64,000 nucleotides of DNA from Octopus sinensis. Taxonomy: Eukaryota. A program made the translations under genes and the position numbers. The notes under the pieces were generated by a model that made no database searches, was not told the origin of the DNA, and saw only the letters and a list, made by a program, of their open reading frames with translations. Positions 1 to 60,279 of this stretch are shown here, in pieces. Within the stretch, counting starts at the first letter, position 1. Every line of letters begins with the position of its first letter. The stretch is from contig NC_043001.1 of the NCBI RefSeq assembly GCF_006345805.1, positions 124,992,001 through 125,056,000 on the forward strand, written 5' to 3'.

Positions 1-760
1 TTCTGCCAACTTACTGTGACAAACGAGTGGCCAGGGTAAGGATTGGCAGAGTACCTCCGGAGATAGAGAAGGTGTGGCTGGTAGCAGCAGTTATGTATAA
101 TAGGGAGGAAGACGCAAAAGTTTTAAAAGTAACAAGGACGAAAGAGGTAAACTGCTGGGGATACGGCCTAGAGGTGGCCATCCAAGTCAGTTTACAAGAC
201 TTGCACAAGATAGCGGAGGAGGTGATACTGCCGGAGGATGTGAAAATGAGAGCAGTGGTGGAGGGAAGACCTCCAGCCTGTTACCAGTGTGGAGTAAGGG
301 GACACATGAGAGCAAGGTGTCCCCAGAAAGACGATAAAGGTATAGAGGAACTGGAGCATCAGGGTGCCGAGCGGGAGCAGAGTGACGAAGTGACGGTCCC
401 AGTGAGTGAGATGTGTTCGGAGAGGGTGGAGGAGGAGTGTACGGTAGTAGATGAGAAGCAGCAAGGTGCTGAGCGGGGGTAGAGTGGCGAAGAGACGGTC
501 CCAGTAAGTGAGAAGTGTTCGGAGAAGTTGGAATATACTGTGGTAAATAAGAAAAAGAAAAAGACGGAAAACGTGGACGCACCGCCAAAGAGTCCACTAA
601 AGAAAAGAAAGGAAAATAAACGGGAAGATGCACAGCAGGAGACTCCAACATCAACAAGGGAAGCCAATGTGAAAAATAAAGTGAGATTGCAAGAACAAGT
701 AACAAAAAAAAGGAACCGAAAAATAAATGGCACATGGTGACATATTCGAAAAGCACGGAT
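1..760 (+). mobile_element. Tx1/L1-like LINE ORF1 remnant with CCHC zinc knuckle
   Basis: VRIGRVPPEI...EGRPPACYQCGVRGHMRARCP (CX2CX4HX4C at 279-320). Premature stop at 482. Imperfect internal tandem duplication of about 110 bp at roughly 355-560. Confidence 0.7.
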
Positions 761-6166: not shown

Positions 6167-6843
6167 TTATAATAATAAATAATGATGAAATTATTGTATA
6201 CAGTGCTCAGGTGCACCACAACTTGTCAGAAAGTGCGTGTAAAGCATATGTAGTAATGCACAAATGTCTGGAAAGTGAACAATGTATGAGTCAGATACAT
6301 GCTTGTGTGTGTATGGAGGGGAGAAAATCAGGTGTAGTGTTGGCGAATCTCAGAAAGCATGGAAGTTTTGAAGGACGCAGTGCTCCGACAACTAACAACT
6401 GATGCTGGCAGCTTGTTCCATGCTTCAGCAACTCTCAGCGTGAAAAAATGTTTCCGAAAGTCATGGGAGCTGTGCTGTTTTCTGACTTTGTAAACATGTC
6501 CACGGGTGTTAGACGGGTGGAGTTTGAAATGGTGCTCAGAGTTATTGTTTGTAAGATGGTTAATAATTTTATGGGTGTCTGCCAAGTCAACTGCCAGACG
6601 TCGGAGTTTCAACGTGTCCATGCCCAGGGAAGTAAGGCGTTCAGAATATGGCAAATGCCTGATGGAGGGTATTCTTTTGGTTGCACGTCGCTGAATGGCT
6701 TCCAGACGATTAACATCCTGGGCAAGATAGGGGTTCCAGACCGGTGATGCAAATTCCAGGTAAGGTCTTACCATAGCTATATAAAGCCGCAGATAGATAG
6801 CCGGAGAGCGGCTCCGTGGACGTTGACTACGATAGTAAATCAT
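6167..6843 (-). mobile_element. CR1-type LINE 3' end
   Basis: RPYLEFASPVWNPY...LEAIQRRATK...TRGH...FFTLRVAEAWNKLP...RQHYT*, then 3'UTR and (ATT)n tail. Confidence 0.92.
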
Positions 6844-7344: not shown

Positions 7345-8569
7345 AAGCTACATTTCTAAATAAGGTTGCATGCGTTTTGAAAATTCAAAAGCCAAAAATC
7401 AGGACGTCGTTAAGAATAAATTTGCAATAAGTCAAGAGTTATCTCCCTTGACATTACTTTGTTTACGACAAAATCACTTTAATAGCGATTAACGGTGTCA
7501 ACAATGAAGTTTTTGCCCCATAATAAAAGAAGAACTGAGAACTTAATAAATTACTGAACAATATATTTATGGAGTGATAGGGACGGGAATTTTCTATGAG
7601 ATACATATTTCTAGATTGCTTCACTTTACTTAAGTTTACGGAATATGTATCAAATTTTCTGAGGGAAGCACATATCGGATCCAAGCCCTGTGAGTGGAGG
7701 TGGGTAGGTGGAAACCGTATGGAAAACTGTCGGATGGAATGTACCAGTAATTCAAAGGTAGAATCTTGTCACACATTGTGCCATGCTGCTTCTGTTTTAA
7801 AATTATGTAAAATGGAACACATCTATAGAATACTCAGCAGCAACATTTAAAATACAAGGGCAGATAATTCAGTCATTCGAGTAAGTGAATTTGCACCGTG
7901 GAGACCGACGGATATCCATTTACTATGGCACGAAGGAAGGAAGGAATTTTATGTCAGATCAATCGTAGTACTACTAGCAATGTACGTACGTACGTACGTA
8001 TGTATGTATGTATGTATGTATGTAGGAGAAGGTAACTCGGGTAACTGGGATAACTCCGACATAAAATCTGCGGCTCAGTGGTTACCGGTGATGTCGACTT
8101 GTTCTTCTTTTCGGATTATGGCTGCTGTTGTTTAGTGAGTGGGATTGATTCAGTGCACAGCCTTTCCTTACTTTAAAAAAAATCTTCTTGCACAGGCATT
8201 GCACGATAACATTGTTCATAATTGTTGATGGTGCTGTGAGTCTCAACTGAATTGCTGGCTGTAGCCTTAAAAAGCAAATAAAAATCAGATTCGATCACAG
8301 CACCAATAACAGTTGAGCTTCGTGCAATGGCCATACTCGATAATGAGGGGGCAGCCATCATGTATGTATGTATGTATGTATGTATGTATGTCTTCCTTCC
8401 TCTTTTTAAATTATTATAAATCTTCCACTGAGGAGGCAACCAGTTTCCAACAAAGAGACAAGGCTCCATCTTTGGGATGTAGTTAACATAGACAAATTCA
8501 CATTTGGAACTTGAGAAAAGTCTTGCATATATATGTATGTATGTATGTAGATAAGTGGGAATGAAGGAA

Positions 8570-9183
8570 AGAAGCAAGCAACCAAGCAACCAAGCAACCA
8601 AGCAAGGCAGGAAGGAAGTTAGGAAGGAAGGAAGGAAGGAAGGAAGGAAGGAAGGAAGGAAGGAAGGAAGGAAGGAAGAAGGAAGAAGGAAGGAAGGAAG
8701 GAAGGAAGGAAGGAAGGAAGGAAGGAAGGAGGAAGGAAGGAAGGAAGGAAGGAAGCAAGGAAGGAAGGGAGGAAGGAAGGAAGGAGGGAGGGAAGGAAGG
8801 AAGGAAGGAAGGAAGGAAGGAAGGAAGGAAGGAAGGAAGGAAGGAAGGAAGGAAGGAAGGAAGGAAGGAAGGAGGGAGGAAGGAAGGAAGAAAGAAAGGA
8901 AGGACAGAAGGAAGGAAGGAGGGAGGGAAGCAAGCAAGCAAGCAAGGAAGGAAGGAAGGAAGGTAGGTAGGTAGGAAGGAAGGAAGGAAGCAACCAAGCA
9001 AAGAAGGAAGGAAGGAAGCAACCAAGCAAAGAAGGAAGGAAGGAAGGAAGGAAGGAAGGAAGGAAGGAAGGAAGGAAGGTAGGAAGGAAGGAAGGAAGGA
9101 AGGAAGGAAGGAAGGAAGCAAGCAAGGAAGGAAGCAAGGAAGGGAGGAAGGGAGGAAGGGAGGAAGGAAGGAAGGAAGGAAGG
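8570..9183 (+). repeat. (GGAA)n polypurine tract, about 610 bp
   Basis: Direct reading; occasional GCAA and GGGA variants. Confidence 0.97.
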
Positions 9184-9333
9184 ATTTTATGCCAGATCAA
9201 TCTTGGTACTATTAGTAGCATGTAAACCAGTACAACCAGTTACATAGTCGGTCCGTCGGCTACTAAACCGATACCCCTCCCAAGTCTGCTTGGCAAGGAG
9301 AGTGATTTTCATTGGACATTCTCCGGGGCGAAA

Positions 9334-10999: not shown

Positions 11000-12300
11000 T
11001 AACTCTTCTATACTTACTTCCCTTGGAAATAACGCCGTACAATATTACGTACTGTCGTCTCCCTACCCAACAACAAACGACCCGGAAACACCCACGGTTT
11101 AAACGCCGGCACATCCTCAACTACGTTCTGACAAGATCAAGGGACAGACGATATGTACGCATCACCCGCTCCATGCCTGGTGCAGATGACTGCTGGACGG
11201 ATCACGGCCTTCTTTTTTTTTACCTTGACATCAAGATTCGCTGCCCAGCAAAGCGGGTCTCAGCAAACATACCTTGCCGACGCTTCGACTGCGCCAAACT
11301 CCGTAACTCACAGGCATCCCAAGACTTCAGGTAATCCATTGTGAGACACCTGGTGGACCTCCCAGAGCCAACCTCCAGTGGACGAGCCTTCGTGAAGCCA
11401 AGACCGCTGCCGCCGAGGAGACAATCGGCTTTGCCCGGAAGAAGGACCAAGACTGGTTTGACGAGAATGATGAAACCATCTCCCGTCTTATTGAAGGCAA
11501 ACTCCGGACGCGCCTAGTCCTCGAGAACCATGCCGCTGCGGAGAACAAACGGAAACCCCAGCAAGCATCAGCGGAAAGCCAGCGAGGAATTCGAGAAGCT
11601 CAGAACATCGGGTAGCAGAGGAAAGCAGAGGAGACGCAAAACTTCGCGGACCAATGAAACTTGCGCAGCTTCTATGCCGCAACCAAGGAGATCTTCGGCC
11701 CCACAAGGTCATCAGTGGGCGGCCTGAAGAACGCAGCTGGCACTACGATAACCGACACCCAGAGAATCCTCGATCGCTTGAAGTCCCATTTCGAGTACCT
11801 TCTTAACGACCGCTCAGGCACTCCTGACGATCACCTCAAAACCACCCCACAGTTCCCCATCCGCCATTGGATGTCCCTGCCGCCCTCACGCCATGAGTTC
11901 ATCAAGGCACTTGCGCGCATGAAGCCGGGGAAAGCGCCAAGACCAGACAACATTTCCTTTGAGTTTTTTACGCACGGGTGTCCTGAACTGAGAAATCATC
12001 TGATGCTCATTATCCTCACGATCTGGGAAAGCAAGACACCCGCCGAACGACTTCCGCGATGCGACTCTCCACACCATCTAGAAGAAGGGAGACAGAGAGG
12101 ATTGCAATAACTATCGGGACATGTCACTTCTGAGCATTGCAAGTAAGATCTTCGCCCGTATCCTACTCAATCGCCTCATCCTCACAGAAGACGTGTTTCC
12201 CATCACTAGGGGTTTTAAGCAAGGATGCGTCGTTGCACCAACCTGTTTCTCTTTGTACATGTTCAGCGAAATCCCACTATAGGCTACAGTTAAACAGTAG
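11000..12300 (+). mobile_element. RTE-clade LINE internal fragment (endonuclease end to RT), frameshifted and deleted
   Basis: LNYVLTR...WTDHGLL; KDQDWFDENDETI; FYAATKEIFGP; KPGKAPRPDNIS; NYRDMSLLSIASKIFARILLNRL; RGFKQGCVVAPTCFSLY. Confidence 0.85.
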
Positions 12301-13865: not shown

Positions 13866-14054
13866 AGGCGCAGGAGTGGCTGTGTGGTAAGTAGCTTGTT
13901 TACCAACCACATGGTTCCGGGTTCAGTCCCACTGCATGGCACCTTGTGTAAGTGTCTTCTACTATAGCCTCGGGCCGACCAAAGCTTTGTGAGTGGATTT
14001 GGTAGACGGAAACTGAAAGAAACCCGTCGTATATATGTATATTATATATATATA

Positions 14055-14135
<81 letters not shown>

Positions 14136-14350
14136 TTGTGCATCCGTGTTTGTCCCCCTAGCATTGCTTGACACCGATGCTGATGTGTTTATGTCCCCGT
14201 CACTTAGCGGTTCGGCAAAAGAGACCGATAGAATAAGTACTGGGCTTACAAAGAATAAGTGCCGGGATCGTGTTGCTCGATTAAAGGCGGTGCTCCAGCA
14301 TGGCCGCAGTCAAATGACTGAAACAAGTAAAAGAGTAAAAGAGTAAAAGA
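13866..14350 (+). mobile_element. SINE family A (tRNA-like head, internal TA/TG microsatellite, (AAGAGTA)n tail)
   Basis: GGAGTGGCTGTGTGGTAAG...GGTTCAGTCCCAC head and ...GACTGAAACAAGTAAAAGAGTA tail. At least 16 copies in the window. Confidence 0.92.
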
Positions 14351-14891
14351 GAGATTGTATCCGTGACTTTACATGTTTTCCACAAGAAGTAAGTCTACAT
14401 CAAATTCAGAAAGATATTGTGACGCCTTCAAATGATGTGGAGTTTGAAGAAATCATTAGAGAATGGTGTGGCTGCGTTGTTAGTGTCCCATAGAGAATGT
14501 TTATCTACCAAGAAACTAAATTCTGTTAGAAAAAGAGCAAGGTGAGAATACAGATGAGAATACAGATGAGAATATGGAAACTCTGTCAACTTCATTTAAA
14601 TTAAATACTAAGAATATTGCTAAAGTGTCTGAAAGTTTTTGCGGATGACAACTCTGTAACATAAAAATTACGAGATAAGGTTACAATGAGCTCAATTTTT
14701 TTAATTGGTTGCGATTTTTTTTATATATATAATTAACTTTTTTTTATTTCCAGTTTTCCCTGTTATAATTTAAGACAGCACGGCCAGGGGACCGTGAAGT
14801 CTTGTATAAAACAAATGGAGAACAGGACCTTTTATGTTGAAAAGAAAGAAAAAGGGAAAGCAAAAATAAATAATAAATAAATAAATAAAAG

Positions 14892-14973
14892 CAAAGCCTT
14901 GTGAGTGGATTTAGTAGACGGAAACTGAAAGAAGCCTGTCGTATATATGTATATATATATATATAATATATAT

Positions 14974-15015
<42 letters not shown>

Positions 15016-15240
15016 GCGTGTGTGTGTTTGTGCGTTGTGTTTGTCCCCCTAGCATTGCTTGACAACCGATGCTGGTGTGTTTATGTCCCCGTCACTTAGC
15101 GGTTCGGCAAAAGGGACCGATAGAATAAGTACTGGGCTTACAAAAGAATAAGTCCTGGGGTCGAGTTGCTCGATTAAAGGCGGTGCTCCAGCATGGCCGC
15201 AGTCAAATGACTGAAACAAGTAAAAGTAAAGTAAAGTAAA
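14892..15240 (+). mobile_element. SINE family A, 5'-truncated
   Basis: Homology to the 13866 copy. Confidence 0.9.
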
Positions 15241-15461
15241 GAGAAGAGAGAACAGAAGGAATAAAAAATAAATAGATGGAATAAAATAAAATAGACTACA
15301 CACTTTTACACATTCGCTCGTCAATCATAAAATCTTAATGCAGTACTACAAGTGACACTAGAGGACTACATACATTTAGAAATCAGTATAGAAATGTATG
15401 TTAACGCCAAGTTTCTATTTCTATTAAGTCAACGTTAATATTTTTTTAGTCGTAAGTATCT

Positions 15462-15838
15462 CTTGCTAACCAACCACATGGTTCCGGGTTCAGTCCCACT
15501 GCGTGGCATCTTGGGCAAGTGTCTTCTGCTATAGACCCGGGCCGACCAATGCCTTGTGAGTGGATTTGGTAGACAAAAACTGAAAGAAGCCTGTCGTATA
15601 TATGTATATATATATGCGTGTGTGTGTCTGTGTTTGTCCCCCTAGCATTGCTTGACAACCGATGCTGGTGTGTTTACGTCCCCGTCACTTAACGGTTCGG
15701 CAAAAGAGACCGATAGAATAAGTACTGGGCTTACAAAGAATAAGTGCCGGTGTCGATTTGCTCGACTAAATGCGGTGCTCCAGCATGGCCGCAGTCAAAT
15801 GACTGAAACAAGTAAAAGAGTAAAAGAGTAAAAGAGTA
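15462..15838 (+). mobile_element. SINE family A
   Basis: Homology to the 13866 copy. Confidence 0.9.
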
Positions 15839-16259
15839 ATGCAAATTTAAATTATGCGATGAGGGAAAGACAACGTTAGTTTGTCAAGTACGGAGAGAAC
15901 TCTGCACCTGTTACAGTATTATTAATTAAATCTAAATAAAATTAAATCCACTTAATTAGCAGTAGTAGCGATGAGATAATTACGGTAGAAATAATAATAT
16001 GCACAGACAGTTATAAAAACTATTGTATTCTAAAAATAGATCATCGCATGACATCATTGACTAGACGCTATTTAAATTAACTGTAGACTAAAACAATACA
16101 TTTGAGTGTTTTCTATTTTGTTTTATTTTTATTTTTGTTTGTTTATGTTTTTGTTTTTTGGTGGGGGTGGTTCACATTTCTAAAAATATAATTTTCCTAA
16201 GTGTAATCGAGAGGCAAGTGATTTGATCTGAGACCATGAATTGAAAGTAAAACAACAAC

Positions 16260-16668
16260 AGCGCAGGAGTGGCTGTGTGGTAAGTAGCTTGCTCACATGG
16301 TTCCGGGTTCAGTCCCACTGCGTGGCATCTTGGGCAAGTGTCTTCTGTTATAGACCCGGGCCGACCAATGCCTTGTGAGTGGATTTGGTAGACGTAAACT
16401 GAAAGAAGCCTGTCGTATATATGTATATATATATATATGTATGTGTGTGTATATGTTTGTATGTCTGTGTTTGTCCCCCTGGCATTGCTTGACAACCGAT
16501 GCTGGTGTGTTAACGTCCCCATCACTTAGCGGTTCGGCAAAAGAGACCGATAGAATAAGTACTGGGCTTACAAAAAGAATAAGTTCTGGGGTCGATTTGC
16601 TCGACTAAAGGCGGTGCTCCAGCATGGCCGCAGTCAAATGACTGAAACAAGTAAAAGAGTAAAGAGTA
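16260..16668 (+). mobile_element. SINE family A
   Basis: Homology; tail-to-tail with the next copy. Confidence 0.9.
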
Positions 16669-16713
16669 ACAGTGTAGAAGATACATATTAGCCATCCAAA
16701 AACGAAAATGATT

Positions 16714-17115
16714 CTCTTTTACTTGTTTCAGTCATTTGACTGCGGCCATGCTGGAGCACCGCCTTTAGTCGAGCAAATCGACCCCGGGACTTATTCTTTG
16801 TATGCCCAGTACTTATTCTATCGGTCTCTTTTGCCGAACCGCTAAGTGACGGGGACGTAAACACACCAACATCGGTTGTCAAGCAATGCTAGGGGGACAA
16901 ACACAGACACACAAACATATACACACACACACACTTATATATATATACATATATACGACAGGCTTCTTTCAGTTTCCGTCTACCAAATCCACTCACAAGG
17001 CATTGGTCGGCCCGGGTCTATAGCAGAAGACACTTGCCCAAGATGCCACGCAGTGGGACTGAACCCGGAACCAAGTGGTTGGTTAGCAAGCTACTTACCA
17101 CACAGCCACTCTTGC
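16714..17115 (-). mobile_element. SINE family A
   Basis: Reverse-complement copy. Confidence 0.9.
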
Positions 17116-17769
17116 TCCTTTTTTTTTTACATTGCTTTCGCGGATTCCTCTGACCCTGTCCAGTTCCATTATTATGAATTTGAATTAGGAGCTTGAGTAA
17201 TTATTAATCTTTCATTTGCTGATAACCTAACCATAGACGCCATCCCTTTCGATGTGTTGCAGATATTCTCTTGATAGAACCTGGTGGCCTTGACCGTTGA
17301 TCTTGTAGAATCCCTCCGCTCAGCATCAATGTAAGAAGCACCCTTGGCTCAGTTGATCTCTTCCCCTACCTTTTCACAATCCGCCATACTGCAGTCCCAT
17401 GACTTCATCGTATTCCTGGCAGGAGAGCTGAATGGGTGCCATGCCTTGCCAATGGGTAGCCCGTAACTATGCAGAGCAATGCCGTCACTCCATGAGGTAT
17501 TTTCAAATTAATTGCATACCCGATTTACGTTAACTACACTTAAAGATTTACTATTTGATATGAAAATTTTCGTCACCCTATTCTGACACTATTCCACTGA
17601 TGAAAATATTGAATAAAATGTAAATGAAAAAAAAATGGTATCACAGGGGCCATGCATACCCTGAACGCAAGGTAAAGTTTTTCGCAAATTATAGTGTGGC
17701 TTACAATGTGTTGCTTACCCATGCTATTTAACTGAAGTGAATTAAGCTTTGTAAGTGTTTGACTAAATT

Positions 17770-22131: not shown

Positions 22132-22163
22132 ATGGCATCTTCGGCCTTGCTTACACAGAATCA
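22132..22163 (+). CDS. BORCS6: BORCS6 coding exon 1 (MASSALLTQN + 2 nt)
   Basis: ATG at 22132, then 32 nt to a strong GTGAGT donor at 22164. The phase-2 CA joins the G at 30069 to make CAG and keeps the exon 2 frame open. Not in the ORF track because it is too short. Confidence 0.75.
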
Positions 22164-24699: not shown

Positions 24700-25090
24700 A
24701 GGCGCAGGAGTGGCTGTATGGTAAGTAGCTGGTTTACCAACCACATGGTTCTGGGTTCAGTCCCACTGCGTGGCACCTTGGGCAAGTGTCTTCTACTATA
24801 GCCTCGGACCGACCAAAGCCTTGTGAGTGGATTTGGTAGACAGAAACTGAAAAAAGCCCGTCGTATATATGTATATATATGCGTGTGTGTGTCTGTGTTT
24901 GTCCCCCTAGCATTGCTTGACAACCGATGCTGGTGTGTTTATGTCCCCGTTACTTAGTGGTTCGGCAAAAGAGACCGATAGAATAAGTACTGGGCTTACA
25001 AAAGAATAAGTCCCAGGGTCGAGTTGCTCGATTAAAAAGGCGGTGCTCCAGCATGGCCGCAGTCAAATGACTGAAACAAGTAAAAGAGTA
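24700..25090 (+). mobile_element. SINE family A (intron 1)
   Basis: Homology. Confidence 0.9.
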
Positions 25091-30068: not shown

Positions 30069-30781
30069 GCTGTCTGAAGGTCATTCAGAGGAGCACCACA
30101 GCAGCAACCGCGATTCTGTTGGAGACACCCGCTCCAGTAGTTGTGGATCGTGTGATGATCATACCATGGATGCTGTATCCTGCGGGAGTGATGCCAGTGA
30201 CTGCTTGCAACCAATTACCATGGAGACAAACCCAATCTTCCAGCACTCTCCTGACAGTGGGACATTTGGGAGCCTAAGGGATGCTGACTTACACATGGCT
30301 CCCTCCGAACTGCAAGAACTGCATCAGCGAAACAAGGATGCACTCTTGCAGCATGAGATTAACATGAACTTGAACCATGGCTTACAATGCATAGATATGA
30401 GCATTGATCAGCATGATATGCATGGTCTTGAAGAAAACGATAACCTTGTGTCTGTTGCCCGGACCCATCTTGATGATAAGCTCAGTGAACAGATTGGCAA
30501 CGGTATTTCAAATGTGGAGTTATTAAAAGCTTGTAAATTAGATTTCCAGCAGAAACTTGACCCCCATTCTTTATCCCTTCCTGTACCCATTCAGAACAGT
30601 GAGCGTAAGAAGCGGCACTGTTCTGTTGAAGACCCTTCATTGGATGCACTTAGTTCCGCTGATAGTGATCTCTCACGTAGCTTACCTCATGGCACCATTG
30701 TACAAAAAGGAGATATGATTGAGTTTATCGCTGACAATTTGGTGGAAAAAATTAAAAGGAGCAGCTCCCTCTCAATGGCAG
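30069..30781 (+). CDS. BORCS6: BORCS6 coding exon 2
   Basis: Polypyrimidine tract and GAAG acceptor ending at 30068. The frame is open upstream of the ORF-track Met at 30166 (LSEGHSEEHH...). It ends with GTIVQKGDMIEFIADNLVEKIKRSS, a block I recognise from invertebrate lyspersins. Donor G|GTAATA at 30782, phase 1. Confidence 0.9.
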
Positions 30782-30927
30782 GTAATATACAAGATGGTTT
30801 GGGGAAGAAAACCCCCTAATTATTTTGATTTTTTTTTTTTTTTTTTTTTTTTCATGTTTCATTGCAACATTTCATTTAGTGTCACATTTTTCACATTCTA
30901 CCTATCATAATAATTGTATAGATTATT

Positions 30928-37820: not shown

Positions 37821-38539
37821 ATATTCTTCTATACACAATCACACACACCCGTATATATATATATATACGTATGTGTGTGTATTTGAAAAAATGAATAGAA
37901 ATTTTTCCACTTCGATAATTAAATGAACTTATAAACATCTAATTATTAAAGTGGGAAAAATTATCAGAAAACCCATTTCTATTGATTCTTTCAAATATAT
38001 AATACTGTACCAAAGACTTTCCATTTCTTATTCTACTATATATATATCTAATCATCATTATTGTTTCCATACTTGCTTGGGTTGGATGGAGTTTGTTGAA
38101 GCAGATTTTCTGTGGTTGGATTCCGTTCCTGTTGCCAATCCTTACCCATTTCCAAGCAAGGTAATATTTCCCCAAGTTTTTTTTTTTTTTTTGCAGAAAA
38201 TTGGAAATAAAATGACACTGCTGATATAACAGTGGCACTCGTTTACAGCCATCACAAAATATCAATTCATAGATACACAAACACACACACATATATAACT
38301 GTCTGTCTGTCCATCCATCCATCCAGTCATTCATACATGCTTGCACATACACACACACACACGACCAGTTTCTTTAAACTTCTGTCTACCAAATCTACTC
38401 AAGGGTTTGGTTTCTCCAAGGCTTTAGAAGACACTTGCTCAAGGTACCATGCAGTACATTTGAAACTGAAATTATGCAGTGGGGAAGCACACTTCCTAAC
38501 CACACAGCCATGCCTGCACCTGTATCGAGTTGCACATGA

Positions 38540-38720
38540 GAAAGTAAGGAGGGATGTCAGGAAGGGCATTGCTGTTACACTTCCAGAAGGGAAGGATCTT
38601 CCTTTGATTCTGACATGCAATGTCTGTGCAAGACCCTGCATCAGTAAAGCTGGACTCATGAGTCATCTTCGTAGTCATAAAACGAGACAGATGACTGACA
38701 ACCTGGCCACTGGTGGTGGT
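38540..38720 (+). mobile_element. RTE LINE C-terminal fragment
   Basis: LTCNVCARPCISKAGLMSHLRSH, the terminal zinc-finger-like motif typical of RTE ORFs. Confidence 0.7.
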
Positions 38721-38959
38721 GTAATTCGGAAGGAGGACTTAAACAACATGCAAAGGTACATGAAACCCAGTTACAACTACAGCCGGCTATTACCAGTAAA
38801 GGTTTTAGTTGCCAATTTTGTACAAGACATTGTAGATCTTTAGCTGGGCTAAAAAGTCACATTCGATCACAGCACCAGTAACAGTCAAGCTTCATGCAAT
38901 GGCCATACTCGATAACGAGGGGGCAGCCATAATATGTATATATATACATATATCTCTCT

Positions 38960-40371: not shown

Positions 40372-40575
40372 CTCTTTTACTTGTTTTAGTCATTTGACTG
40401 CAGTCATGCTGGAGCAGCGCCTTTTTAATCGAGCAGCTCGACCCCGGGACTTATTCTTTTGTAAGCCCAGTACTTATTCTATCGGTCTCTTTTGCCGAAC
40501 CGCTAAGTGACGGGAACGTAAACACACCAGCATCGGTTGTCAAGCAATGCTAGGGGGACAAACATAGACACACAA

Positions 40576-40610
<35 letters not shown>

Positions 40611-40782
40611 CATATATACGACGGGCTTCTTTCAGTTTCCGTCTACCAAATCCACTCACAAAGCTTTGGTCGGCCCGAGGCTATAGTAGAAGACACTTGC
40701 CCAACGTACCACGCAGTGGGACTGAACCCGGAACCATGTGGTTGGTAAACAAGCTACTTACCACACAGCCACTCCTACGCCT
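40372..40782 (-). mobile_element. SINE family A (intron 2)
   Basis: Reverse-complement homology. Confidence 0.9.
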
Positions 40783-44574: not shown

Positions 44575-44828
44575 ATTCCAGCAGCCTACACACCCGGACA
44601 TCCAGTGTCCAGAGCTTTGGTAGCATCTCCAGCACAAATTCAGCCTACTCTGTCTCGAGAACATCCTACTCAGGCGTGTCTCAGTCACCCAGCAGCTTGG
44701 TGCCACAGAGCCCTGACGACATCCCTCCTGTTGACCCCCATGCCTTAATGGATCTTGAGACTCAAGCCAAACAGGTGGCTGACCGTTTGGACCACATGAT
44801 GTCTAGCCTCAAATCTAATCTTCATAAG
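44575..44828 (+). CDS. BORCS6: BORCS6 coding exon 3
   Basis: TGCAG acceptor after a pyrimidine tract. Phase 1 (G+AT=D). Encodes a Ser-rich linker then IPPVDPHALMDLETQAKQVADRLDHMMSSLKSNLHK, the start of the DUF2365 coiled coil. Donor AAG|GTAAGC. Confidence 0.93.
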
Positions 44829-46283: not shown

Positions 46284-46488
46284 TCTCTTTTACTTGTTTC
46301 AGTCATTTGACTGCGGCCATGCTGGAGCACCGCCTTTTTTAGTCGAGCAAATCGACCCCAGGACTTATTCTTTGTAAGCATAGTACTTATCCTATCGGTC
46401 TCTTTTGCCGAACTGCTAAGTAACGGGGACGTAAACACACCAGCATCAGTTGTCAAGCGATGTTGGGGAGACAAATACAGACACACAA

Positions 46489-46524
<36 letters not shown>

Positions 46525-46673
46525 GACGGGCTTCTTTCAGTTTCCATCTACCAAATCCACTCACAAGGCTTTGGTTGGCCCGAGGCTATAGTAGAAGACA
46601 CTTGCCCAAGGTGCCACGCAGTGGGACTGAACCCGGAACTATGTGGTTGGTAAGCAAGCTACTTACCACACAG
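46284..46673 (-). mobile_element. SINE family A (intron 3)
   Basis: Reverse-complement homology. Confidence 0.9.
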
Positions 46674-48236: not shown

Positions 48237-48320
48237 ATGTCTGCCTTGACCTCAGGGTGTTTGGATGCTTATAAAAAATCTGTTGATAGCACCTGTGATG
48301 CAGTTGATGCAAGTATCAAA
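48237..48320 (+). CDS. BORCS6: BORCS6 coding exon 4
   Basis: TTGTAG acceptor, 84 nt encoding MSALTSGCLDAYKKSVDSTCDAVDASIK, donor GTGAGT, phase 0/0. Confidence 0.93.
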
Positions 48321-50582: not shown

Positions 50583-50970
50583 TAGGTGCAGGAGTGGCTG
50601 TGTGGTAAGTAGCTTGCTAACCAACCACATGGTTCCGGGTTCAGTCCCACTGCGTGGCATCTTGGGCAAGTGTCTTCTGCTATAGCCCCGGGGCGACCAA
50701 AGCCTTGTGAGTGGATTTGGTAGACGGAAACTGAAAGAAGCCTGTCGTATATATGTATATATATATGTATGTGTCTGTGTTTGTCCCCCTAGCATTGCTT
50801 GACGACCGATGCTGGTGTGTTTATGTCCCCGTCACTTAGCGGTTCGGCAAAAGAGACCGATAGAATAAGTACTGGGCTTACAAAGAATAAGTCCCGGGGT
50901 CGAGTTGCTCGATTAAAGGCGGTGCTCCAGCATGGCCGCAGTCAAATGACTGAAACGAGTAAAAGAGTAA
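50583..50970 (+). mobile_element. SINE family A (intron 4)
   Basis: Homology. Confidence 0.9.
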
Positions 50971-51426: not shown

Positions 51427-51503
51427 TCAATGTATGCACTAATGGCAAAGTGTGAAGAACTAGGCAAATCAATGACTCCAATTTACCAACTGGCAAATCA
51501 AAT
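51427..51503 (+). CDS. BORCS6: BORCS6 coding exon 5
   Basis: TTGCAG acceptor. Encodes SMYALMAKCEELGKSMTPIYQLANQ + AT and ends at the U12-type donor GTATCCTT. Confidence 0.92.
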
Positions 51504-51511
51504 GTATCCTT
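51504..51511 (+). promoter_or_regulatory. U12-type 5' splice site (GTATCCTT)
   Basis: Exact match to the RTATCCTT minor-spliceosome donor consensus at the exon 5 boundary. Confidence 0.9.
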
Positions 51512-51883
51512 CAAACTAATCTGAAACATTTACATATATGTTGGGACAGACAGACAGACTCACAACACACACACAACTCACACACCACACACATGTATGC
51601 ATATTACTGTTGCATTTTGTTGAGTAAATAGCTTATGGTTAAAAAAAAAGTATGTGGTTTACATCTCATCACTGGTACTGGGTTGTGTTGTTTAATGTCA
51701 AAGGTACATAACTTTCAATAAGCTCAATAAAAGCTCAGCTAACTTTGTCGTATGTAGCTAGGTGCTATGAATGCTCAGTCCACCTCAGGAGACGGTTTGT
51801 GCTCTATACAATTTATTATTTGGTACAAAGCCTTTGGGTTGACATAGTCTATGCCTGATCCTTTATAGACTAGATTTCATTAG

Positions 51884-52303
51884 GACACCCATAAAATTAT
51901 CAACCATCTTACAAACAATAACTCTGAGCACCTTTTCTAACTCCACCCGCCTAACACCTGTGGACATATTTACAAAGTCAGAAAACAACACAGCTCCCAT
52001 GACTTTAGGAAACATTTTTTCATGCTGAGAGTTGCTGAAGCATGGAACAAACTGCCGGCATCAGTTGTTAGTTGTCGGAGCACTGCATCCTTCAAAACTT
52101 CCATGCTTTCTGAGATTCGACAACACTACACCTGATTTTCTCCCCTCCATACACATACAAGCATGTATCTGACTCGTACATTGTTCACTTTCCAGACATT
52201 TTTACATTACTTCACATACTTTATATGCACTTTCTGACAAGTTGTGGTGCACCTGAGCACTGTATACAATAATTTCATTATTATTTTTATTATTATTATT
52301 ATA
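51884..52303 (+). mobile_element. CR1-type LINE 3' end, inside the U12 intron
   Basis: Same sequence as 6167-6600 in reverse, with (ATT)n tail. Confidence 0.92.
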
Positions 52304-53387
52304 AGATTAGCATTGTACTGTTTCTACCATATCACACCTCTGAGCACCATATTGTTAATGACTGACTCCTTTAGCTTGCAAAGAATAGACTCCTTCAGGC
52401 TAACTTACAATAAATACTTAGACAAAATATGTACAGGTATGGCTCTGTGGTTATGAAGTTTGCTTTGCAACCATATGGTTCTGAGTTCAGTCCCACTGTG
52501 CAGATCCTTGGGCAAGTGTCTGCTATTATAGCCCTGAGCCAAATAATGCCTTATAAATGAATTTGTTGGGTGAAAATTGTATGGAAGCCCACTGGAAAGC
52601 CAGCGTTGGTTTGTTTACATCCCCGTAAACTTAGAGGTACAGCAAGAGGGATGACTAGAATAAATACCAGACTTAAAAGAATAAGTGCTAGGGTCGATTT
52701 GTTAAAGGTGGTACACCTGCACGGTTGCAGTCTAATGGCTGAAACCGCTAAAAAAATTAGACCAAAAAAATCTGTAGTCAAATTCCAAATATCCAACAGG
52801 TTATGAAACTCCCCACTCACATAGACACAAAACACTGTAGTGAGTCAGTAAACTTCTTGAAGAGGTGCTAGCAACCGTTTTTCTAGAAACAGGTCACATG
52901 GAACGTGGTTCAACCTAGGTGGGCACACTAGTAAAAAAATTCAAGGTAATTTTTTATTAGGCATACCTTAGTGAAAGTCCTCTAGGCTACAGTTTGCATA
53001 TGACTGGCTATCTGCTAGAAATAGCAGTCAAAGCACCTTCATATCACACCTTACTACAATTTTAGTTTCTGTAAAGTTTTGCCTTGGATAGACCAGTGGT
53101 CGAAGTAAGTTGGCCAATATTGAGTGCACAGTGTCTTGTGTTGTTGACAATTATACGAAATGAGAAAAGGTATGAGAGAGAGAGAGTTGCTCTTGGCTCT
53201 GTTTACTAAGGGCTGACTTGACTTAACTTGGTGCTAAACCACAACTATATCTGAGTTACTTGGGATTTTAAAGATAAATGGGGAAAAATATGTTATGTAT
53301 ATGTATTTTATACTGTTGATGTCATAACAATTTTATAAACTTTTGAGAAAATGTAAAATAATTCTTTTTTGGAAGAGTGGATTTCAA

Positions 53388-53616
53388 GCTACCATTGGTT
53401 TCATGTTAAGAGAGAAATCCCTTAATTATCAAGCCTGCCATATGGCAACATTGGTGTTTGGACACTGATGTTCTCATATGGCAGGCTTGATAATTGTTAA
53501 TGGATTTCTGTGACATAAAACCAATGGTAGCCATAACCCATAAATAAAGTATATACATATATATATATTATATATTGGGGGAGGGTAATATCCTTTTTCA
53601 TTGAAAGGAATGTAAT
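53388..53616 (+). repeat. Intronic copy of the 3'UTR hairpin + AATAAA block
   Basis: About 230 bp, near-identical to 55411-55642. Confidence 0.95.
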
Positions 53617-54150
53617 CACCTGTAAATATTGGGTTGAGAAATCTGAGGAGACGTGGGTTCATGACCCACAGACAGCCTTTGACTTTTTCTATCCAAAAGA
53701 GTTTCTCAGCCCAATATTTAAATCTGTGGTCTCTGTGCCGGTGGCACATAAAAAGCACCATCCGATTGTGGCCATTGCCACCTCGCCTGGCCCCCATGCC
53801 TGTGGCACGTAAAAAGCACCATCTGACCATGGCCGTTTGCCAGCCCCATCTGGCACCTAAAAAGCACCCACTACACTCACTGAGTGGTTGGCGTTAGGAA
53901 GGGCATCCAGCCATAGAAACATTGCCAGATCAGACTGGGCCTGGTGCAGCCTTCTGGCTTCCCAGACCCCAGTTGAACCGTCCAGCCCATGCTAGCATGG
54001 AAAGCAGACGCTAAATGATGATGATAATGTTGATGATGTTCTCGACCATTTTTCAATTTTGGACCCTTTTGATTCCTTCTTTGCTCTCTGGACCTCCGTA
54101 GCCAGTAACTGTGTATTAAAAAAATCTTCCTGCATTTTGATCATTAAATC

Positions 54151-54863
54151 GGTGCAGGCATGGCTGTGCGGTAAGAAGCTTGCTTCCCAACCACATGGTT
54201 CTGGGTTCAGTCCCACCATGTGGCACCTTGGGCAAGTGTCTCTTACTGTATATATACACTTATGTGTGTGTCTGTGTTTGCCCTACCCCTCCACTATCAC
54301 CACTTGACAACCAATGCTGGTGTGTTTACGTCCCTGTAATTTAGCAGTTCAGCAAACAGGGCTGATAGAATAAGTACTAGGCTTACAAACAATAAGTCCT
54401 GGGGTTGATTTCTTTGACTAAAAATTCCTTTAGAGCAGTGCTCAGCATGGCTGCAGTCAAATGACTGAAACAAGTAAGAACAATATTATAATGAATAGGA
54501 GTGGCTGTGTGGTAAGTAGCTTGCTTACCAACCACATGGTCCCGGGTTCAGTCCCACTGCGTGGCACCTTAGGCAAGTGTCTTCTACTATAGCCTCGAGC
54601 CAAAACCTTGTGAGTGGATTTGGTAGACGGAAACTGAAAGAAGCCTGTCGTATATATGTATATATATGTAAGTGTGCGTTTGTCCTCCCAACATCGCTTG
54701 ACAACCAATGCTGGTGTGTTTACGTCCCCGTAACTTAGTGGTTCGGCAAAAGAGACCGATAGAATAAGTACTATGCTTCCAAAGAATAAGTCCTGGGGTC
54801 GATTTGCTCGACTAAAGGCGGTGCTCTAGCATGGCCACTGTCAAATGACTGAAACAAAAAGAG
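54151..54863 (+). mobile_element. Two tandem SINE family A copies in the U12 intron (diverged 54151-54478, younger 54496-54863)
   Basis: Homology. Confidence 0.85.
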
Positions 54864-55060
54864 TGTATAAAAAAATCAAAATATTTTGTGTATTGTTGAA
54901 GTGTAACCAATTTATTGTACATAAATTTTAACACGAAAATCTTATTTGGGCCCCAGTTGAGACCACTGATTTACATGCTATTGTATATAGCTTTGTATGC
55001 TTCAAGATCCACTGTTCCAAAAAAAAAATTTTTTCTTTCTTTCCAAACTGTTATACTGTA

Positions 55061-55069
55061 TTCCTTGAC
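55061..55069 (+). promoter_or_regulatory. U12-type branch site (TTCCTTGAC)
   Basis: Matches TTCCTTRAC. The branch A at 55068 is 15 nt from the end of the AG acceptor, with no polypyrimidine tract between them. Confidence 0.88.
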
Positions 55070-55083
55070 TTGTTGTCTCATAG

Positions 55084-55141
55084 AAAGGAGATAAAACGCT
55101 TATTGGATATCTTTGAAAACAAGCTTGTAGACAGATCCTGA
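55084..55141 (+). CDS. BORCS6: BORCS6 coding exon 6 (terminal)
   Basis: CATAG acceptor 14 nt after the U12 branch motif TTCCTTGAC. AT+A gives Ile, then KEIKRLLDIFENKLVDRS*, matching the IKxIKRxLDxFE C-terminus of BORCS6 proteins as I recall it. Confidence 0.9.
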
Positions 55142-56940: not shown

Positions 56941-57231
56941 TTGTGTGTGTGTGTGTGTGTGTGTATAGACATGGGTATGTGTGTACTTGTATGTGTATAT
57001 ATGTATTTATGTATATATATATATATGTGTGTGTATATATGTATATGTATGTATATATATATATATATATGTATGTGTATATATATATGTATATATGTAT
57101 ATGTATGTATATATATATATATGTATGTATATATATATATGTATATATGTATGTATATATACTTTGATACTTTGATAGGTTTCGACCATTATTGGCCCAG
57201 GCCATGTCTAACTTAATAGCACCACCTGGTA

Positions 57232-57268
<37 letters not shown>

Positions 57269-57578
57269 TATGTATATATGTATGTATGTATATATATATA
57301 TGTATATGTATGTATGTATATATATATATGTATATATATGTATGTATATATATATGTATATATATATGTATGTATATATATATATGTATATATATATGTA
57401 TGTATGTATGTATGTATATGTATGTATGTATGTATGTATATATATATATGTATATATGTATTTATGTATATGTATATATATATATATGTATGTATATATA
57501 TATATGTATGTATGTATGTATGTATATATATATATGTATATATGTATTTATGTATATGTATATATATATATATGTGTG

Positions 57579-57619
<41 letters not shown>

Positions 57620-57981
57620 ATGTGTATATATGTGTATATATGTATATGTGTATATATGTGTGTGTATGTGTATATATGTGTATATATGTATATGTGTATA
57701 TATATATGTATATGTGTATATATGTATTTATGTGTATGTATATATGTATATGTGTATATATGTATTTATGTATATATGTATATGTGTATATATGTATTTA
57801 TGTATATGTGTATATATATGTATATGTGTATATATGTATTTATGTATATGTGTATATATATATATATGTGTGTGTATATATGTGTATGTATGTTTGTGGG
57901 TATATGTATGTATGTATGTGTGTATATATTTGTATGTTGTGTGTGTGTGTATGTATATGTGCACGTATAAGTGTGTATATA
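56941..57981. repeat. About 1-kb compound (TA)/(TG)/(TATG) microsatellite
   Basis: Direct reading, with one unique interruption at about 57165-57232. Confidence 0.97.
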
Positions 57982-59321
57982 CTAGGTGCATTCAAAAAAT
58001 ATCTGACTTTATTTTTTTCCCAAGAAAACTAATGCTGCATGAGTAAAATCCTTTTAGGTGGGAGATGACGCCACCCTTCCTGCTTCAGTTCCCAACTGTT
58101 ACACCTAAGAGTACAGACGTGTAGTGTGCACTCATCAGATTTTCATTTTCACTGAGATGCACCACACAGAGATATTGCATCAAATTTTGCCAAAAGTCTG
58201 GTGGTACTCAAGCTCAAACCATCCAGAAGATTCAGCAGGCCTTTGGTGATGATGCCATGGGAAAAACTCAAATCAAGGTGCAGTACAGCTGATTCAGACA
58301 TGGCTGCAAGTCAGTGAAGCATACTCAGGCAGGCCATCCACAAGCCAAAATGAGGAGCTAATTGAAAAGGTTAAGTGAATAATCCATGGGAGACCAATGT
58401 GTAACAATTGAGGAAATTGCTCATGAAGTGGGAATAAGCACAAGATCAGCGCATTCCATTTTAACGGAGGATTTGTGCATGTGGAGAAGGCGAAATTTTC
58501 CCCCAATGTACTGGCAGAGCAGTAGAAGCAACTCCACATAGAAATCGCTCAGAGCATGCTGGGCTGAGCAAACCATAACCCAGACTTCATGAAAACAATC
58601 ATTACTGGTGATAAGACCCAAGTTTATGGTCTTTGCTCAATGTGTTTGGTCATCTTGTTAGCCATATTCTGAACGCCTTACTTCCCTGGGCATGGATACA
58701 TTGAAACTCCGACGTCTGGCAGCTGACTTGACAGACACCCATAAAATTATCAACCATCTTACAAGCAGTAACTCTGAGCACCTTTTCAAACTCCACCCGT
58801 CTAACACCCGTGGACATATTTACAAAGTCAGAAAACAGCACAACTCCCATGACTTTAGGAAACATTTTTTCACGCTGAGAGTTGCTGAAGCATGGAACAA
58901 ACTGCCGGCATCAGTTGTTAGTTGTCGGAGCACTGCATCCTTCAATACTTCCATGCTTTCTAAGATTCGCCAACACTACACCTGATTTTCTCCCCTCTAT
59001 ACACACACAAGCATGTATCTGACTCATACATTGTTCGCTTTCCAGACATTTTTACATTACTGCATATACTTTATATGCACTTTCAGACGAGTTGTGGTGC
59101 ACCTGAGCACTGTATACAATAATTTCATTATTATTATTATTATAAAAGGACAATCTGATGAGCATGCACTACACGTCTGTACTCAAGGCATAACAACATG
59201 GAAATTTTCATGCATGCACAAGAAGGGTGGCACCACTTCCCACCCAAAGGATTTTGCCTACACAGCATTACTTTTGGCTGGGGGAAAAAATGAAATCAGA
59301 TACGTTTTTGAATGCACCTCA
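57982..59321 (+). mobile_element. Second copy of the same mariner derivative, interrupted by CR1
   Basis: TA-flanked TIRs AGGTGCATTCAAAAA / TTTTTGAATGCACCT. Contains CIKFCQKSGGTQAQTIQKIQQAFGDDAMG. Confidence 0.85.
58661..59143 (+). mobile_element. CR1-type LINE 3' end inserted in a mariner remnant
   Basis: MDTLKLRRLAADL...RQHYT* plus tail. Flanked on both sides by mariner sequence. Confidence 0.92.
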
Positions 59322-59875: not shown

Positions 59876-60279
59876 GGCGCAGGAGTGGCTGTGTGGTAAG
59901 AAGCTTGCTAACCAACCACATGGTTCCGGGTTCAGTCCCACTGCGTGGCATCTTGGGCAAGTGTCTTCTGCTATAGCCCCGGGCCAACCAATGCCTTGTG
60001 AGTGGATTTGGTAGATGGAAACTGAAAGAAGCCTGTCGTATATATGTGTATATATATATATATGTATGTTTGTGTGTCTGTGTTTGTACCCCTAGCATTG
60101 CTTGACAACCGATGCTGGTGTGCTTACGTCCCCGTCACTTAGCAGTTCGGCAAAAAGAGACTGATAGAATAAGTACTGGGCTTACAAGGAATAAGTCCCG
60201 GGGTCGATTTGCTCGACTAAAGGCGGTGCTCCAGCATGGCCGCAGTCAAATGACTGAAACAAGTAAAAGAGTAAAGAGT
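59875..60279 (+). mobile_element. SINE family A
   Basis: Homology. Confidence 0.9.

What the first reader, a model, noticed from the sequence alone, without database searches (positions are those of the whole stretch)
51504..55083. BORCS6 ends through a U12-type (minor spliceosome) intron
Seen: donor AT|GTATCCTTC, branch TTCCTTGAC at 55061-55069 and CATAG acceptor. The 3580-nt phase-2 intron restores IKEIKRLLDIFE. Established: these are the diagnostic U11 and U12 recognition motifs, and minor introns are rare and often rate-limiting. Inference: the last 20 residues of the coiled coil depend on minor splicing, and retention gives ...NQMYPSN*. Automated annotation is likely to stop the gene at that read-through stop. 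From memory mammalian BORCS6 has a single coding exon, so this intron would be an ancestral feature lost there.
Basis: partly seen in the sequence, partly recalled or inferred. Interest (0 to 1): 0.72.

Follow-up and report, generated by a model that had tools for sequence, protein, structure and literature searches.

The report
Conserved U12-type last intron in octopus BORCS6
The last intron of the octopus BORCS6 gene carries textbook minor-spliceosome (U12-type) signals that are kept at the same codon from molluscs to amphioxus; it is a real but ordinary member of a well-known intron class.

Summary
Window 51504-55083 is a 3580-nt, phase-2 GT-AG intron. Its donor is AT|GTATCCTT, the only GTATCCTT in the window on either strand. 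The branch site is TTCCTTGAC, with the branch A 15 nt from the acceptor.

Splicing joins ...LANQ to IKEIKRLLDIFENKLVDRS*. That completes the Pfam BORCS6 domain: 2-101 of 101 positions at 140 bits, against 2-90 at 116 bits for read-through ...NQMYPSN*.

The orthologous intron has the same position, phase and flanking 84- and 77-nt exons, with U12-type ends, in oyster, abalone, an annelid, a brachiopod, a horseshoe crab and amphioxus. A sponge (Sycon) has a U2-type intron at the same site. Nematostella has no intron there. The orangutan gene, in the same 90% cluster as human, is one coding exon. So "ancestral, lost in mammals" holds, at least back to the bilaterian ancestor.

Two details fail. 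RefSeq's O. bimaculoides model already uses this junction, although at least six deposited models in other species read through it (...QMYP...). The last exon supplies 19 residues, not 20.

Dependence on the minor spliceosome is inferred from sequence and was not assayed. No junction reads from this species were seen. No paper I could search links BORCS6 to U12 introns. Modest interest.

The parts
22132..22162 (+). BORCS6 coding exon 1 (ATG...AAT CA|gtgagt; MASSALLTQN + 2 nt of the Gln codon)
   Evidence: Exact match to the N-terminus of RefSeq model P0004. The phase-2 end is completed by the G at 30069.
30069..30781 (+). Coding exon 2 (713 nt). It encodes the low-complexity N-terminal region and the conserved GDMIEFIADNLVEKIKRSS motif. 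An internal alternative donor at 30502|30503 is used by isoform X2.
   Evidence: Splice sites and frame. The isoform X2 sequence P0004 joins ...EQIGN to DSSSLH.
44575..44828 (+). Coding exon 3 (254 nt), the start of the BORCS6 C-terminal helix domain
   Evidence: The related cephalopod transcript breaks at the same point.
48237..48320 (+). Coding exon 4 (84 nt; MSALTSGCLDAYKKSVDSTCDAVDASIK)
   Evidence: An exon of 84 nt sits at the same place in all seven other intron-bearing species examined.
51427..51503 (+). Coding exon 5 (77 nt; SMYALMAKCEELGKSMTPIYQLANQ + AT of the Ile codon)
   Evidence: The exon is 77 nt in all seven other intron-bearing species.
51504..51511 (+). U12-type 5' splice site GTATCCTT
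   Evidence: Exact match to the (A/G)UAUCCUU consensus quoted in PMC8199999. It is the only copy in the window.
51517..51519 (+). In-frame TAA reached if the intron is retained (...NQMYPSN*)
51504..55083 (+). The 3580-nt, phase-2, GT-AG U12-type intron. It carries three SINE copies (52431-52745, 54151-54475, 54497-54855) and a LINE 3' fragment (51941-52132).
   Evidence: and 6/74.
55061..55069 (+). U12-type branch-point sequence TTCCTTGAC (branch A at 55068, 15 nt from the last intron base)
   Evidence: The consensus UCCUUAAC and the 10-20 nt window are quoted in PMC8199999.
55082..55083 (+). AG acceptor
55084..55141 (+). Coding part of the terminal exon: the third base of the Ile codon, then KEIKRLLDIFENKLVDRS, then TGA (55139-55141)
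   Evidence: It adds Pfam profile positions 91-101 and 24 bits. It aligns to 9tqb_B ...qikemrrlvelfe.

Best explanation
The window holds the octopus orthologue of BORCS6, a subunit of the lysosome-positioning BORC complex. It has six coding exons spanning 22132-55141 on the + strand. Its last intron (51504-55083) is a GT-AG U12-type intron.

Inferred mechanism: U11 recognises the GTATCCTT donor, and U12 pairs with TTCCTTGAC and bulges the A at 55068. The minor spliceosome then joins 51503 to 55084. This creates the Ile codon AT|A and adds the last 19 residues (IKEIKRLLDIFENKLVDRS).

Those residues are the last five or so turns of one long helix that packs into a four-helix bundle of BORC. If the intron is not removed, translation ends after five foreign residues (MYPSN*) and that conserved end of the helix is missing.

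The intron is old. The U12-type version sits at the same codon in lophotrochozoans, a chelicerate and amphioxus, so it predates the protostome-deuterostome split. The position itself is shared with a sponge, where the intron is U2-type. Apes have lost it together with every other coding intron.

Shown here: the sequence signals, the reading frame, homology of the terminal exon, a spliced transcript in a relative, and conservation of position and type. Inferred: which spliceosome acts, and any regulatory consequence.
For: 1. Signals. The donor is an exact GTATCCTT. The branch site TTCCTTGAC lies 15 nt from the AG. These match the published definition of (A/G)UAUCCUUU plus UCCUUAAC at 10-20 nt. 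The donor motif is unique in the window.

2. Coding. The spliced product covers Pfam BORCS6 positions 2-101 of 101 at 140.2 bits. The read-through product covers 2-90 at 115.9 bits. The PDB BORCS6 chain 9tqb_B aligns across the junction. The residues that the last exon encodes (I92, K93, E94, I95, K96, L99, F102, E103) are invariant or nearly so in alignment A2. AlphaFold2 gives one helix over residues 8-109 at pLDDT 94, running straight through the junction at residues 91/92.

3. Use of the junction. RefSeq XP_014768993.1, 100% identical to the window, ends with the spliced C-terminus. Transcript contigs from three independent sequencing runs of a relative (83% protein identity) carry the CDS uninterrupted. 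They break against the window at 51503 and 55084, to within the few bases that the overlapping alignments allow.

4. Conservation. The intron has the same phase 2 after the AT of the Ile codon, and the same 84- and 77-nt upstream exons, in every case below. The number after each branch site is the distance to the 3' splice site.
- Saccostrea: GTATCCTT / TGCCTTAAC-11
- Haliotis: GTATCCTC / TTCCTTAAC-10
- Owenia: GTATCCTT / TTCCTTGAC-11
- Lingula: GTATCCTT / TGCCTTAAC-11
- Tachypleus: GTATCCTT / TTCCTTAAG-10
- Branchiostoma: GTATCCTT / TTCCTTAAC-13
Intron lengths range from 196 to 8118 nt. None of the other donors of these genes is GTATCC.

5. Mis-annotated models in four more molluscs end ...QMYP. 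That spells ATG TAT CCN, so the donor there is AT|GTATCC too.

6. Losses and changes. Sycon has GTAAGT...cttcag at the same site. Nematostella has no intron there. The Pongo CDS is one exon of 1071 nt.
Against: No experiment or read-level data from this species was available, so the 51503^55084 junction rests on a RefSeq model and on a relative's transcripts.

The branch-to-acceptor distance of 15 nt is inside the allowed 10-20 nt window but outside the 11-13 nt optimum. The orthologues have 10-13 nt.

The stretch before the acceptor is fairly pyrimidine-rich: 71% over positions -20 to -4, against 65% for the U2-type Sycon intron. The criterion of lacking a polypyrimidine tract is therefore not clearly met.

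I did not run a trained classifier such as intronIC.
Confidence: 0.9

Rival explanations
1. The intron is real and is used, but the major (U2-type) spliceosome removes it. On this view the U12-like motifs are coincidental or vestigial.
For: The termini are GT-AG, and the last 20 nt are 71% pyrimidine. At the same position the sponge Sycon has a plain U2-type intron, so the site can work with the major spliceosome.
Against: The donor AAT|GTATCC matches the U1 consensus CAG|GTAAGT poorly at positions -1, +4, +5 and +6 (read). GTATCCT plus a CCTTRA branch box 10-15 nt from the AG is kept in seven lineages whose intron bodies are unrelated and 196-8118 nt long. Such conservation is not expected of U2-type introns.
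Confidence: 0.05
2. The main product ends at the read-through stop (...NQMYPSN*), through intron retention or polyadenylation inside the intron. On this view the downstream exon is a minor or unused alternative.
For: AATAAA or ATTAAA hexamers lie at 51726 and 52409 inside the intron. Minor introns are often spliced slowly (abstract of PMC3728624). Several deposited models in other species end this way.
Against: Those models are ab initio calls, not transcripts. The read-through form loses 11 profile positions and 24 bits of the Pfam domain, including residues invariant across phyla. The relative's assembled transcripts and the RefSeq model all carry the spliced end.
Confidence: 0.03
3. The U12-type state is not ancestral. 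A U2-type intron, as in Sycon, was converted to U12-type in the bilaterian stem. This concerns history only, not the present mechanism.
For: The only non-bilaterian with an intron at this site has a U2-type one. Nematostella has none. So no U12-type copy was seen outside Bilateria.
Against: Conversion is generally taken to run from minor to major, because the minor motifs carry more information (PMC10639083). Only one sponge and one cnidarian were sampled.
Confidence: 0.3

Closest known systems
U12-type (minor-spliceosome) GT-AG introns, as catalogued in U12DB, MIDB and intronIC surveys
   Same: The donor is an exact (A/G)TATCCTT. The branch box is close to TCCTTAAC and lies 10-20 nt from the 3' splice site. 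It is a single minor intron among major introns, it is not phase 0, and its position and type are conserved across phyla. The lineages that carry it (molluscs, Lingula, horseshoe crab) are those reported as rich in minor introns (PMC10639083).
   Different: Nothing differs in kind. The branch-to-acceptor spacing (15 nt) is a little longer than the 11-13 nt optimum. The host gene has no human minor-intron counterpart, because the ape gene has no coding introns. For that reason it would be absent from human-centred lists of minor-intron genes.
BORCS6 (C17orf59, lyspersin), a subunit of BORC
   Same: It has the full PF10157 C-terminal helix domain (140 bits) and 46% or lower identity to vertebrate and cnidarian members over that domain. 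It matches the solved BORCS6 chain 9tqb_B. It also has the upstream GD(M/L)xxF(I/V)AxxLxxKI(K/R) motif seen in the human-cluster sequence.
   Different: The octopus gene spans 33 kb in six coding exons. The orangutan gene is one coding exon of 1071 nt. The N-terminal region is unrelated low-complexity sequence.
Minor-to-major intron conversion, and loss of introns through reverse-transcribed mRNA
   Same: Sycon has a U2-type intron at the identical codon and phase. The ape copy lacks all coding introns at once. These are the two recognised fates of minor introns (PMC10639083).
   Different: The direction of the Sycon difference and the mechanism of the ape loss are inferred. Neither was tested here.

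Membership tests
U12-type intron | 5' splice site (A/G)TATCCTT at +1 to +8 | tested here: met
   GTATCCTT at 51504-51511 is an exact match and the only copy in the window. The consensus is quoted.
U12-type intron | Branch-point box close to TCCTTAAC, 10-20 nt upstream of the 3' splice site | tested here: met
   TTCCTTGAC at 55061-55069, with the branch A 15 nt from the last intron base. This is inside the 10-20 nt range but outside the 11-13 nt optimum.
U12-type intron | GT-AG or AT-AC termini | tested here: met
   GT at 51504-51505 and AG at 55082-55083.
U12-type intron | No strong polypyrimidine tract | tested here: inconclusive
   Positions -20 to -4 are 71% pyrimidine, partly because of the branch box itself. 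The U2-type Sycon intron has 65%.
U12-type intron | Same type kept at the orthologous position in distant species | tested here: met
   Six further lineages have GTATCCT(T/C) plus a CCTTRA box 10-13 nt from the AG at the same codon and phase. Four more molluscs show it by the ...QMYP read-through signature.
U12-type intron | Removal depends on the U11, U12, U4atac and U6atac snRNPs | not testable with these tools
   This needs knock-down or suppressor-snRNA experiments. Octopus sinensis is among the species listed in a figure legend of a minor-intron survey (PMC10639083), but I did not look for the snRNA genes.
U12-type intron | High posterior from a trained classifier (intronIC or PWM scores) | not tested
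BORCS6 (PF10157) | Pfam gathering score over the whole C-terminal helix domain | tested here: met
   140.2 bits against a cut-off of 35, covering profile positions 2-101 of 101 with the spliced end.
BORCS6 (PF10157) | Sequence match to a solved BORCS6 chain, and one long helix | tested here: met
   9tqb_B at E = 5.6e-24, aligned over residues 53-150 of that chain. AlphaFold2 gives a helix over residues 8-109 at pLDDT 94.2.
BORCS6 (PF10157) | Assembles into BORC together with BORCS8, BLOC1S1 and KxD1 | not testable with these tools
   Known for the human and C. elegans proteins (PMC12846789). Not tested for octopus.
Intronless (retrogene-like) mammalian BORCS6 | The coding sequence is uninterrupted in the genome | tested here: met
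   Pongo abelii locus L011: the gene spans 1001-2074 and translates directly to the 357-aa protein. The same 90% cluster holds Homo sapiens NP_060092.2. The human locus itself was not fetched.

The most novel reading that the evidence does not exclude
The terminal U12 intron of BORCS6 is a conserved regulatory switch. Because it gates the last five helical turns that BORCS6 needs to enter BORC, the activity of the minor spliceosome (for example U6atac level under stress) would set how much assembly-competent BORCS6 is made, and so tune lysosome positioning, across bilaterians. Mammals would have escaped this control when a processed, intronless copy replaced the gene.
Probability: 0.08. Interest if true: 0.6.

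Novelty: new member of a known kind. Interest (0 to 1): 0.3.

Why it matters
This is a clean, deeply conserved example of a minor intron in a gene that human-centred catalogues cannot list, because the ape gene has no coding introns.

It has a practical consequence. Gene callers that do not model U12 donors truncate BORCS6 at ...QMYP... in at least six deposited annotations. Those models lose residues that are invariant in the family.

It also gives one locus that shows all three fates of a minor intron: kept as U12-type (molluscs, annelid, brachiopod, chelicerate, amphioxus), present as U2-type (sponge), and deleted (Nematostella, apes). That makes it a convenient test case for the direction of intron-type conversion.

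None of this changes what is known about how minor introns work.

Tried and rejected
I found the exons instead from stop-to-stop ORFs and splice sites.
- The search for homologous proteins with 110-residue profiles listed only proteins of about 200 aa or less. Full-length deuterostome, cnidarian and sponge proteins were therefore missing. I got them from the exhaustive representative search and named them through cluster look-ups.
- Look-ups for a bee protein (P0073) and a lamprey protein (P0242) found no contig. As a result, I examined no insect locus and no non-mammalian vertebrate locus. The time of loss within vertebrates is open.
- Rfam on the whole window gave no match at gathering score, and ARAGORN found no tRNA. 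Nothing RNA-coding was detected inside the intron.
- Four literature searches pairing BORCS6 or C17orf59 with minor-intron or U12 terms found nothing. The supplements of two minor-intron surveys were either not held or held nothing relevant.
- A regular-expression tally of last-exon conservation returned nothing. I used the invariant-column lists of alignments A2 and A3 instead.
- I considered that the terminal exon might belong to another gene or be a chance ORF, and rejected it. The frame, Pfam coverage, PDB alignment, RefSeq model and a relative's transcript all join it to exon 5.
Full report
**1. What is in the sequence**

The + strand at 51427-51503 reads cag|TCA ATG ... AAT CAA AT|gtatccttcaaactaa. 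Translated straight through, it gives SMYALMAKCEELGKSMTPIYQLANQMYPSN*. At 55061-55083 the sequence is ttccttgacttgttgtctcatag, followed by AAAGGAGATAAAACGC....

Joining 51503 to 55084 makes the codon AT|A (Ile). The product continues KEIKRLLDIFENKLVDRS and ends at TGA 55139-55141. The only correction is that the last exon supplies 19 residues, counting the split Ile, not 20.

**2. More than chance**

GTATCCTT occurs once in the whole window on both strands, and that copy sits at this exon boundary. About two copies are expected anywhere in the window. TCCTTRAC occurs seven times against about four expected. From those rates, I estimate the chance of both motifs at one pre-specified exon pair at about 1e-8. 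The gene's other donors are ordinary: GTGAGT, GTAATA, GTAAGC and GTGAGT.

**3. The gene**

I rebuilt the gene from splice sites and open frames. Its coding exons are:
- 22132-22162
- 30069-30781
- 44575-44828
- 48237-48320 (84 nt)
- 51427-51503 (77 nt)
- 55084-55141

The phases fit throughout. The product scores 140.2 bits on Pfam PF10157 (BORCS6 C-terminal helix; cut-off 35) and covers profile positions 2-101 of 101. The read-through form scores 115.9 bits and stops at position 90.

The solved BORCS6 chain 9tqb_B aligns across the junction: query lanqikeikrlldifen against lagqikemrrlvelfet. In an alignment of 11 protostome sequences, the residues that the last exon encodes include the invariant E94, I95 and E103 and the nearly invariant I92, K93, K96, L99 and F102. 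The equivalent segment is also conserved among deuterostome, cnidarian and sponge sequences.

AlphaFold2 predicts one uninterrupted helix over residues 8-109 of the 110-residue domain at mean pLDDT 94.2. The junction at residues 91/92 therefore lies inside the helix. A recent study describes BORC as two tetramers of intertwined helices. BORCS6 is bundled with BORCS8, BLOC1S1 and KxD1, and the C-termini point outward (PMC12846789). The last exon thus supplies the distal five or so turns of that bundle. The conclusion that the truncated form assembles poorly is my inference.

**4. Is the junction used?**

RefSeq XP_014768993.1 (Octopus bimaculoides isoform X2) is 100% identical to the window's exons and ends ...IYQLANQIKEIKRLLDIFENKLVDRS.

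Transcript-like contigs of about 1.65 kb come from three independent sequencing runs of a relative with 83% protein identity. They carry the whole CDS uninterrupted. By blastn they break against the window at the exon ends listed above, to within the few bases that the overlapping alignments allow, including 51503 and 55084 (transcript ...GATCAAAT|AAAAGAGATC...). I saw no read-level data from this species.

**5. Conservation of the intron**

I mapped annotated proteins exactly onto their loci with a small spliced mapper. The last intron falls after the AT of the same Ile codon (phase 2), preceded by exons of 84 and 77 nt, in the following species.

| Species | Donor | Branch box, distance to 3' splice site | Intron length (nt) |
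|---|---|---|---|
| Saccostrea echinata | AT\|GTATCCTT | TGCCTTAAC, 11 | 251 |
| Haliotis rufescens | GTATCCTC | TTCCTTAAC, 10 | 974 |
| Owenia fusiformis | GTATCCTT | TTCCTTGAC, 11 | 399 |
| Lingula anatina | GTATCCTT | TGCCTTAAC, 11 | 1079 |
| Tachypleus tridentatus | GTATCCTT | TTCCTTAAG, 10 | 8118 |
| Branchiostoma floridae | GTATCCTT | TTCCTTAAC, 13 | 196 |

None of the other introns of these genes has a GTATCC donor. These ends fit the published definition: (A/G)UAUCCUUU, then UCCUUAAC 10-20 nt from the 3' splice site, with 11-13 nt optimal (PMC8199999). The carriers are among the lineages reported as rich in minor introns (PMC10639083). The U12-type intron is therefore at least as old as the protostome-deuterostome ancestor.

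**6. Outside Bilateria, and in mammals**

The sponge Sycon ciliatum has the same exon pattern and an intron at the same codon and phase. Its ends are U2-type: AT|GTAAGTCG ... tttttgaatcttcag. Nematostella vectensis encodes the whole domain in one exon.

The Pongo abelii gene is a single coding exon of 1071 nt that translates directly to the 357-aa protein. That protein is in the same 90% cluster as human NP_060092.2. The human locus itself was not fetched.

Conversion is generally taken to run from minor to major type (PMC10639083). The simplest history is therefore an old U12-type intron that was converted in the Sycon lineage and deleted in Nematostella and on the way to apes. With one sponge and one cnidarian sampled, I give the opposite direction (U2 to U12 in the bilaterian stem) about 0.3.

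Gene models of a sturgeon and a frog, and one unnamed fish-like sequence, read through or retain sequence at the preceding ...SIK| boundary. This suggests that the loss of coding introns happened within vertebrates. I could not fetch those loci.

**7. Annotation errors elsewhere**

Deposited models end in the read-through signature ...Q-M-Y-P (ATG TAT CCN, meaning AT|GTATCC) in:
- Lymnaea stagnalis (P0046)
- Pinctada imbricata (P0047)
- Plakobranchus ocellatus (P0048)
- Dreissena polymorpha (P0061)
- an ENA contig (P0084)

Two Nymphon striatum models read ...HQTYPLCV... and then rejoin the frame.

**8. Mechanism and limits**

The signals, the frame, the homology of the last exon, use of the junction in a relative, and conservation of position and type are all shown. 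Three things are inferred from established knowledge of minor splicing: that U11 and U12 recognise the sites, that splicing is slow or limiting, and that retention yields a BORC-incompetent protein.

Points that weaken a textbook call:
- the 15-nt branch-to-acceptor spacing is longer than the optimum and longer than in the orthologues;
- the tail of the intron is 71% pyrimidine;
- no trained classifier was run.

I put 0.9 on a minor-spliceosome intron, 0.05 on major-spliceosome removal, and 0.03 on the read-through form being the main product.

**9. Novelty**

No paper in the searchable library pairs BORCS6 or C17orf59 with U12 or minor introns. The intron is nevertheless already in RefSeq models, and genome-wide surveys that included Octopus, Lingula and horseshoe crabs would score it as minor. 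It is a new, well-documented member of a known class, with a tidy evolutionary pattern and a practical lesson for annotation. It is not a new kind of element.

Noticed in passing
window 50585-50960 and about 25 other places (e.g. 13867-17118, 24701-25081, 40379-40776, 46292-46673, 59876-60264); inside the U12 intron at 52431-52745, 54151-54475 and 54497-54855: A SINE-like repeat of about 376 bp, with copies 70-95% identical, is scattered on both strands of the window. Three copies lie inside the U12 intron, and the nearest ends about 230 nt before the acceptor. ARAGORN calls no tRNA in the window.
   Followed up: partly
window 30502|30503 (inside exon 2): RefSeq isoform X2 (P0004) uses an internal donor, GGCAACG|GTATTT. 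It skips 279 nt (93 codons), which removes the GDMIEFIADNLVEKIKRSS motif that is conserved from molluscs to the human-cluster sequence.
   Followed up: partly
window 30782-30816 (start of intron 2); protein P0005: A 1.2-kb Logan contig from a 97%-identical octopus encodes ...SLSMAGNIQDGLGKKTP. That is read-through of the exon 2 donor, so it is either a retained intron or unspliced RNA.
   Followed up: no
window 51941-52132 (+) inside the U12 intron, and 6328-6843 (-): The two sites share an ORF tail...HIYKVRKQHSSHDFRKHFF.LRVAEAWNKLPASVVSCRSTASFKTSMLSEIRQHYT. It looks like the 3' end of a retroelement ORF, and one copy is inside the intron. Pfam was not run on it.
   Followed up: no
window 27-482 (+), 1819-2340 (+), 11661-12110 (+), 38232-38843 (+): These ORFs look like retroelement remnants. 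Two have CCHC-knuckle-like motifs (CYQCGVRGHMRARCP; CYGCGGLHYKKDCP). One looks like a reverse-transcriptase fragment. One, in intron 2, has C2H2-like zinc-finger motifs. No domain search was run on them.
   Followed up: no
window 8173-9221 and 57192-58046: Long simple-sequence tracts produce spurious ORFs: PSFL/KEGR repeats at the first site and (TA/CA)-rich YIYV repeats at the second.
   Followed up: no
L012 4219-4646 (Sycon ciliatum): An intron sits at the identical codon and phase as the U12 intron but has U2-type ends (GTAAGT ... cttcag). It is a candidate case of intron-type conversion.
   Followed up: partly
L009 (Nematostella vectensis) 1001-2688 and 3565-3688: Nematostella BORCS6 has a single intron near the N-terminus and none in the helix domain. 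The next gene downstream on the same strand hits Pfam CLN3, another lysosomal protein.
   Followed up: no
proteins P0046, P0047, P0048, P0061, P0084, P0232, P0462: Deposited gene models of Lymnaea, Pinctada, Plakobranchus, Dreissena, an ENA contig and Nymphon read through the U12 donor (...QMYP... or ...QTYP...). They lose or garble the conserved C-terminus.
   Followed up: yes
proteins P0420 (Acipenser ruthenus), P0422 (Lithobates pipiens), P0419: These vertebrate models run on, or carry an insert, right after ...VDMSIK, which is the boundary of the 84-nt and 77-nt exons. That intron therefore seems to survive in some non-mammalian vertebrates. The loci could not be fetched.
   Followed up: no
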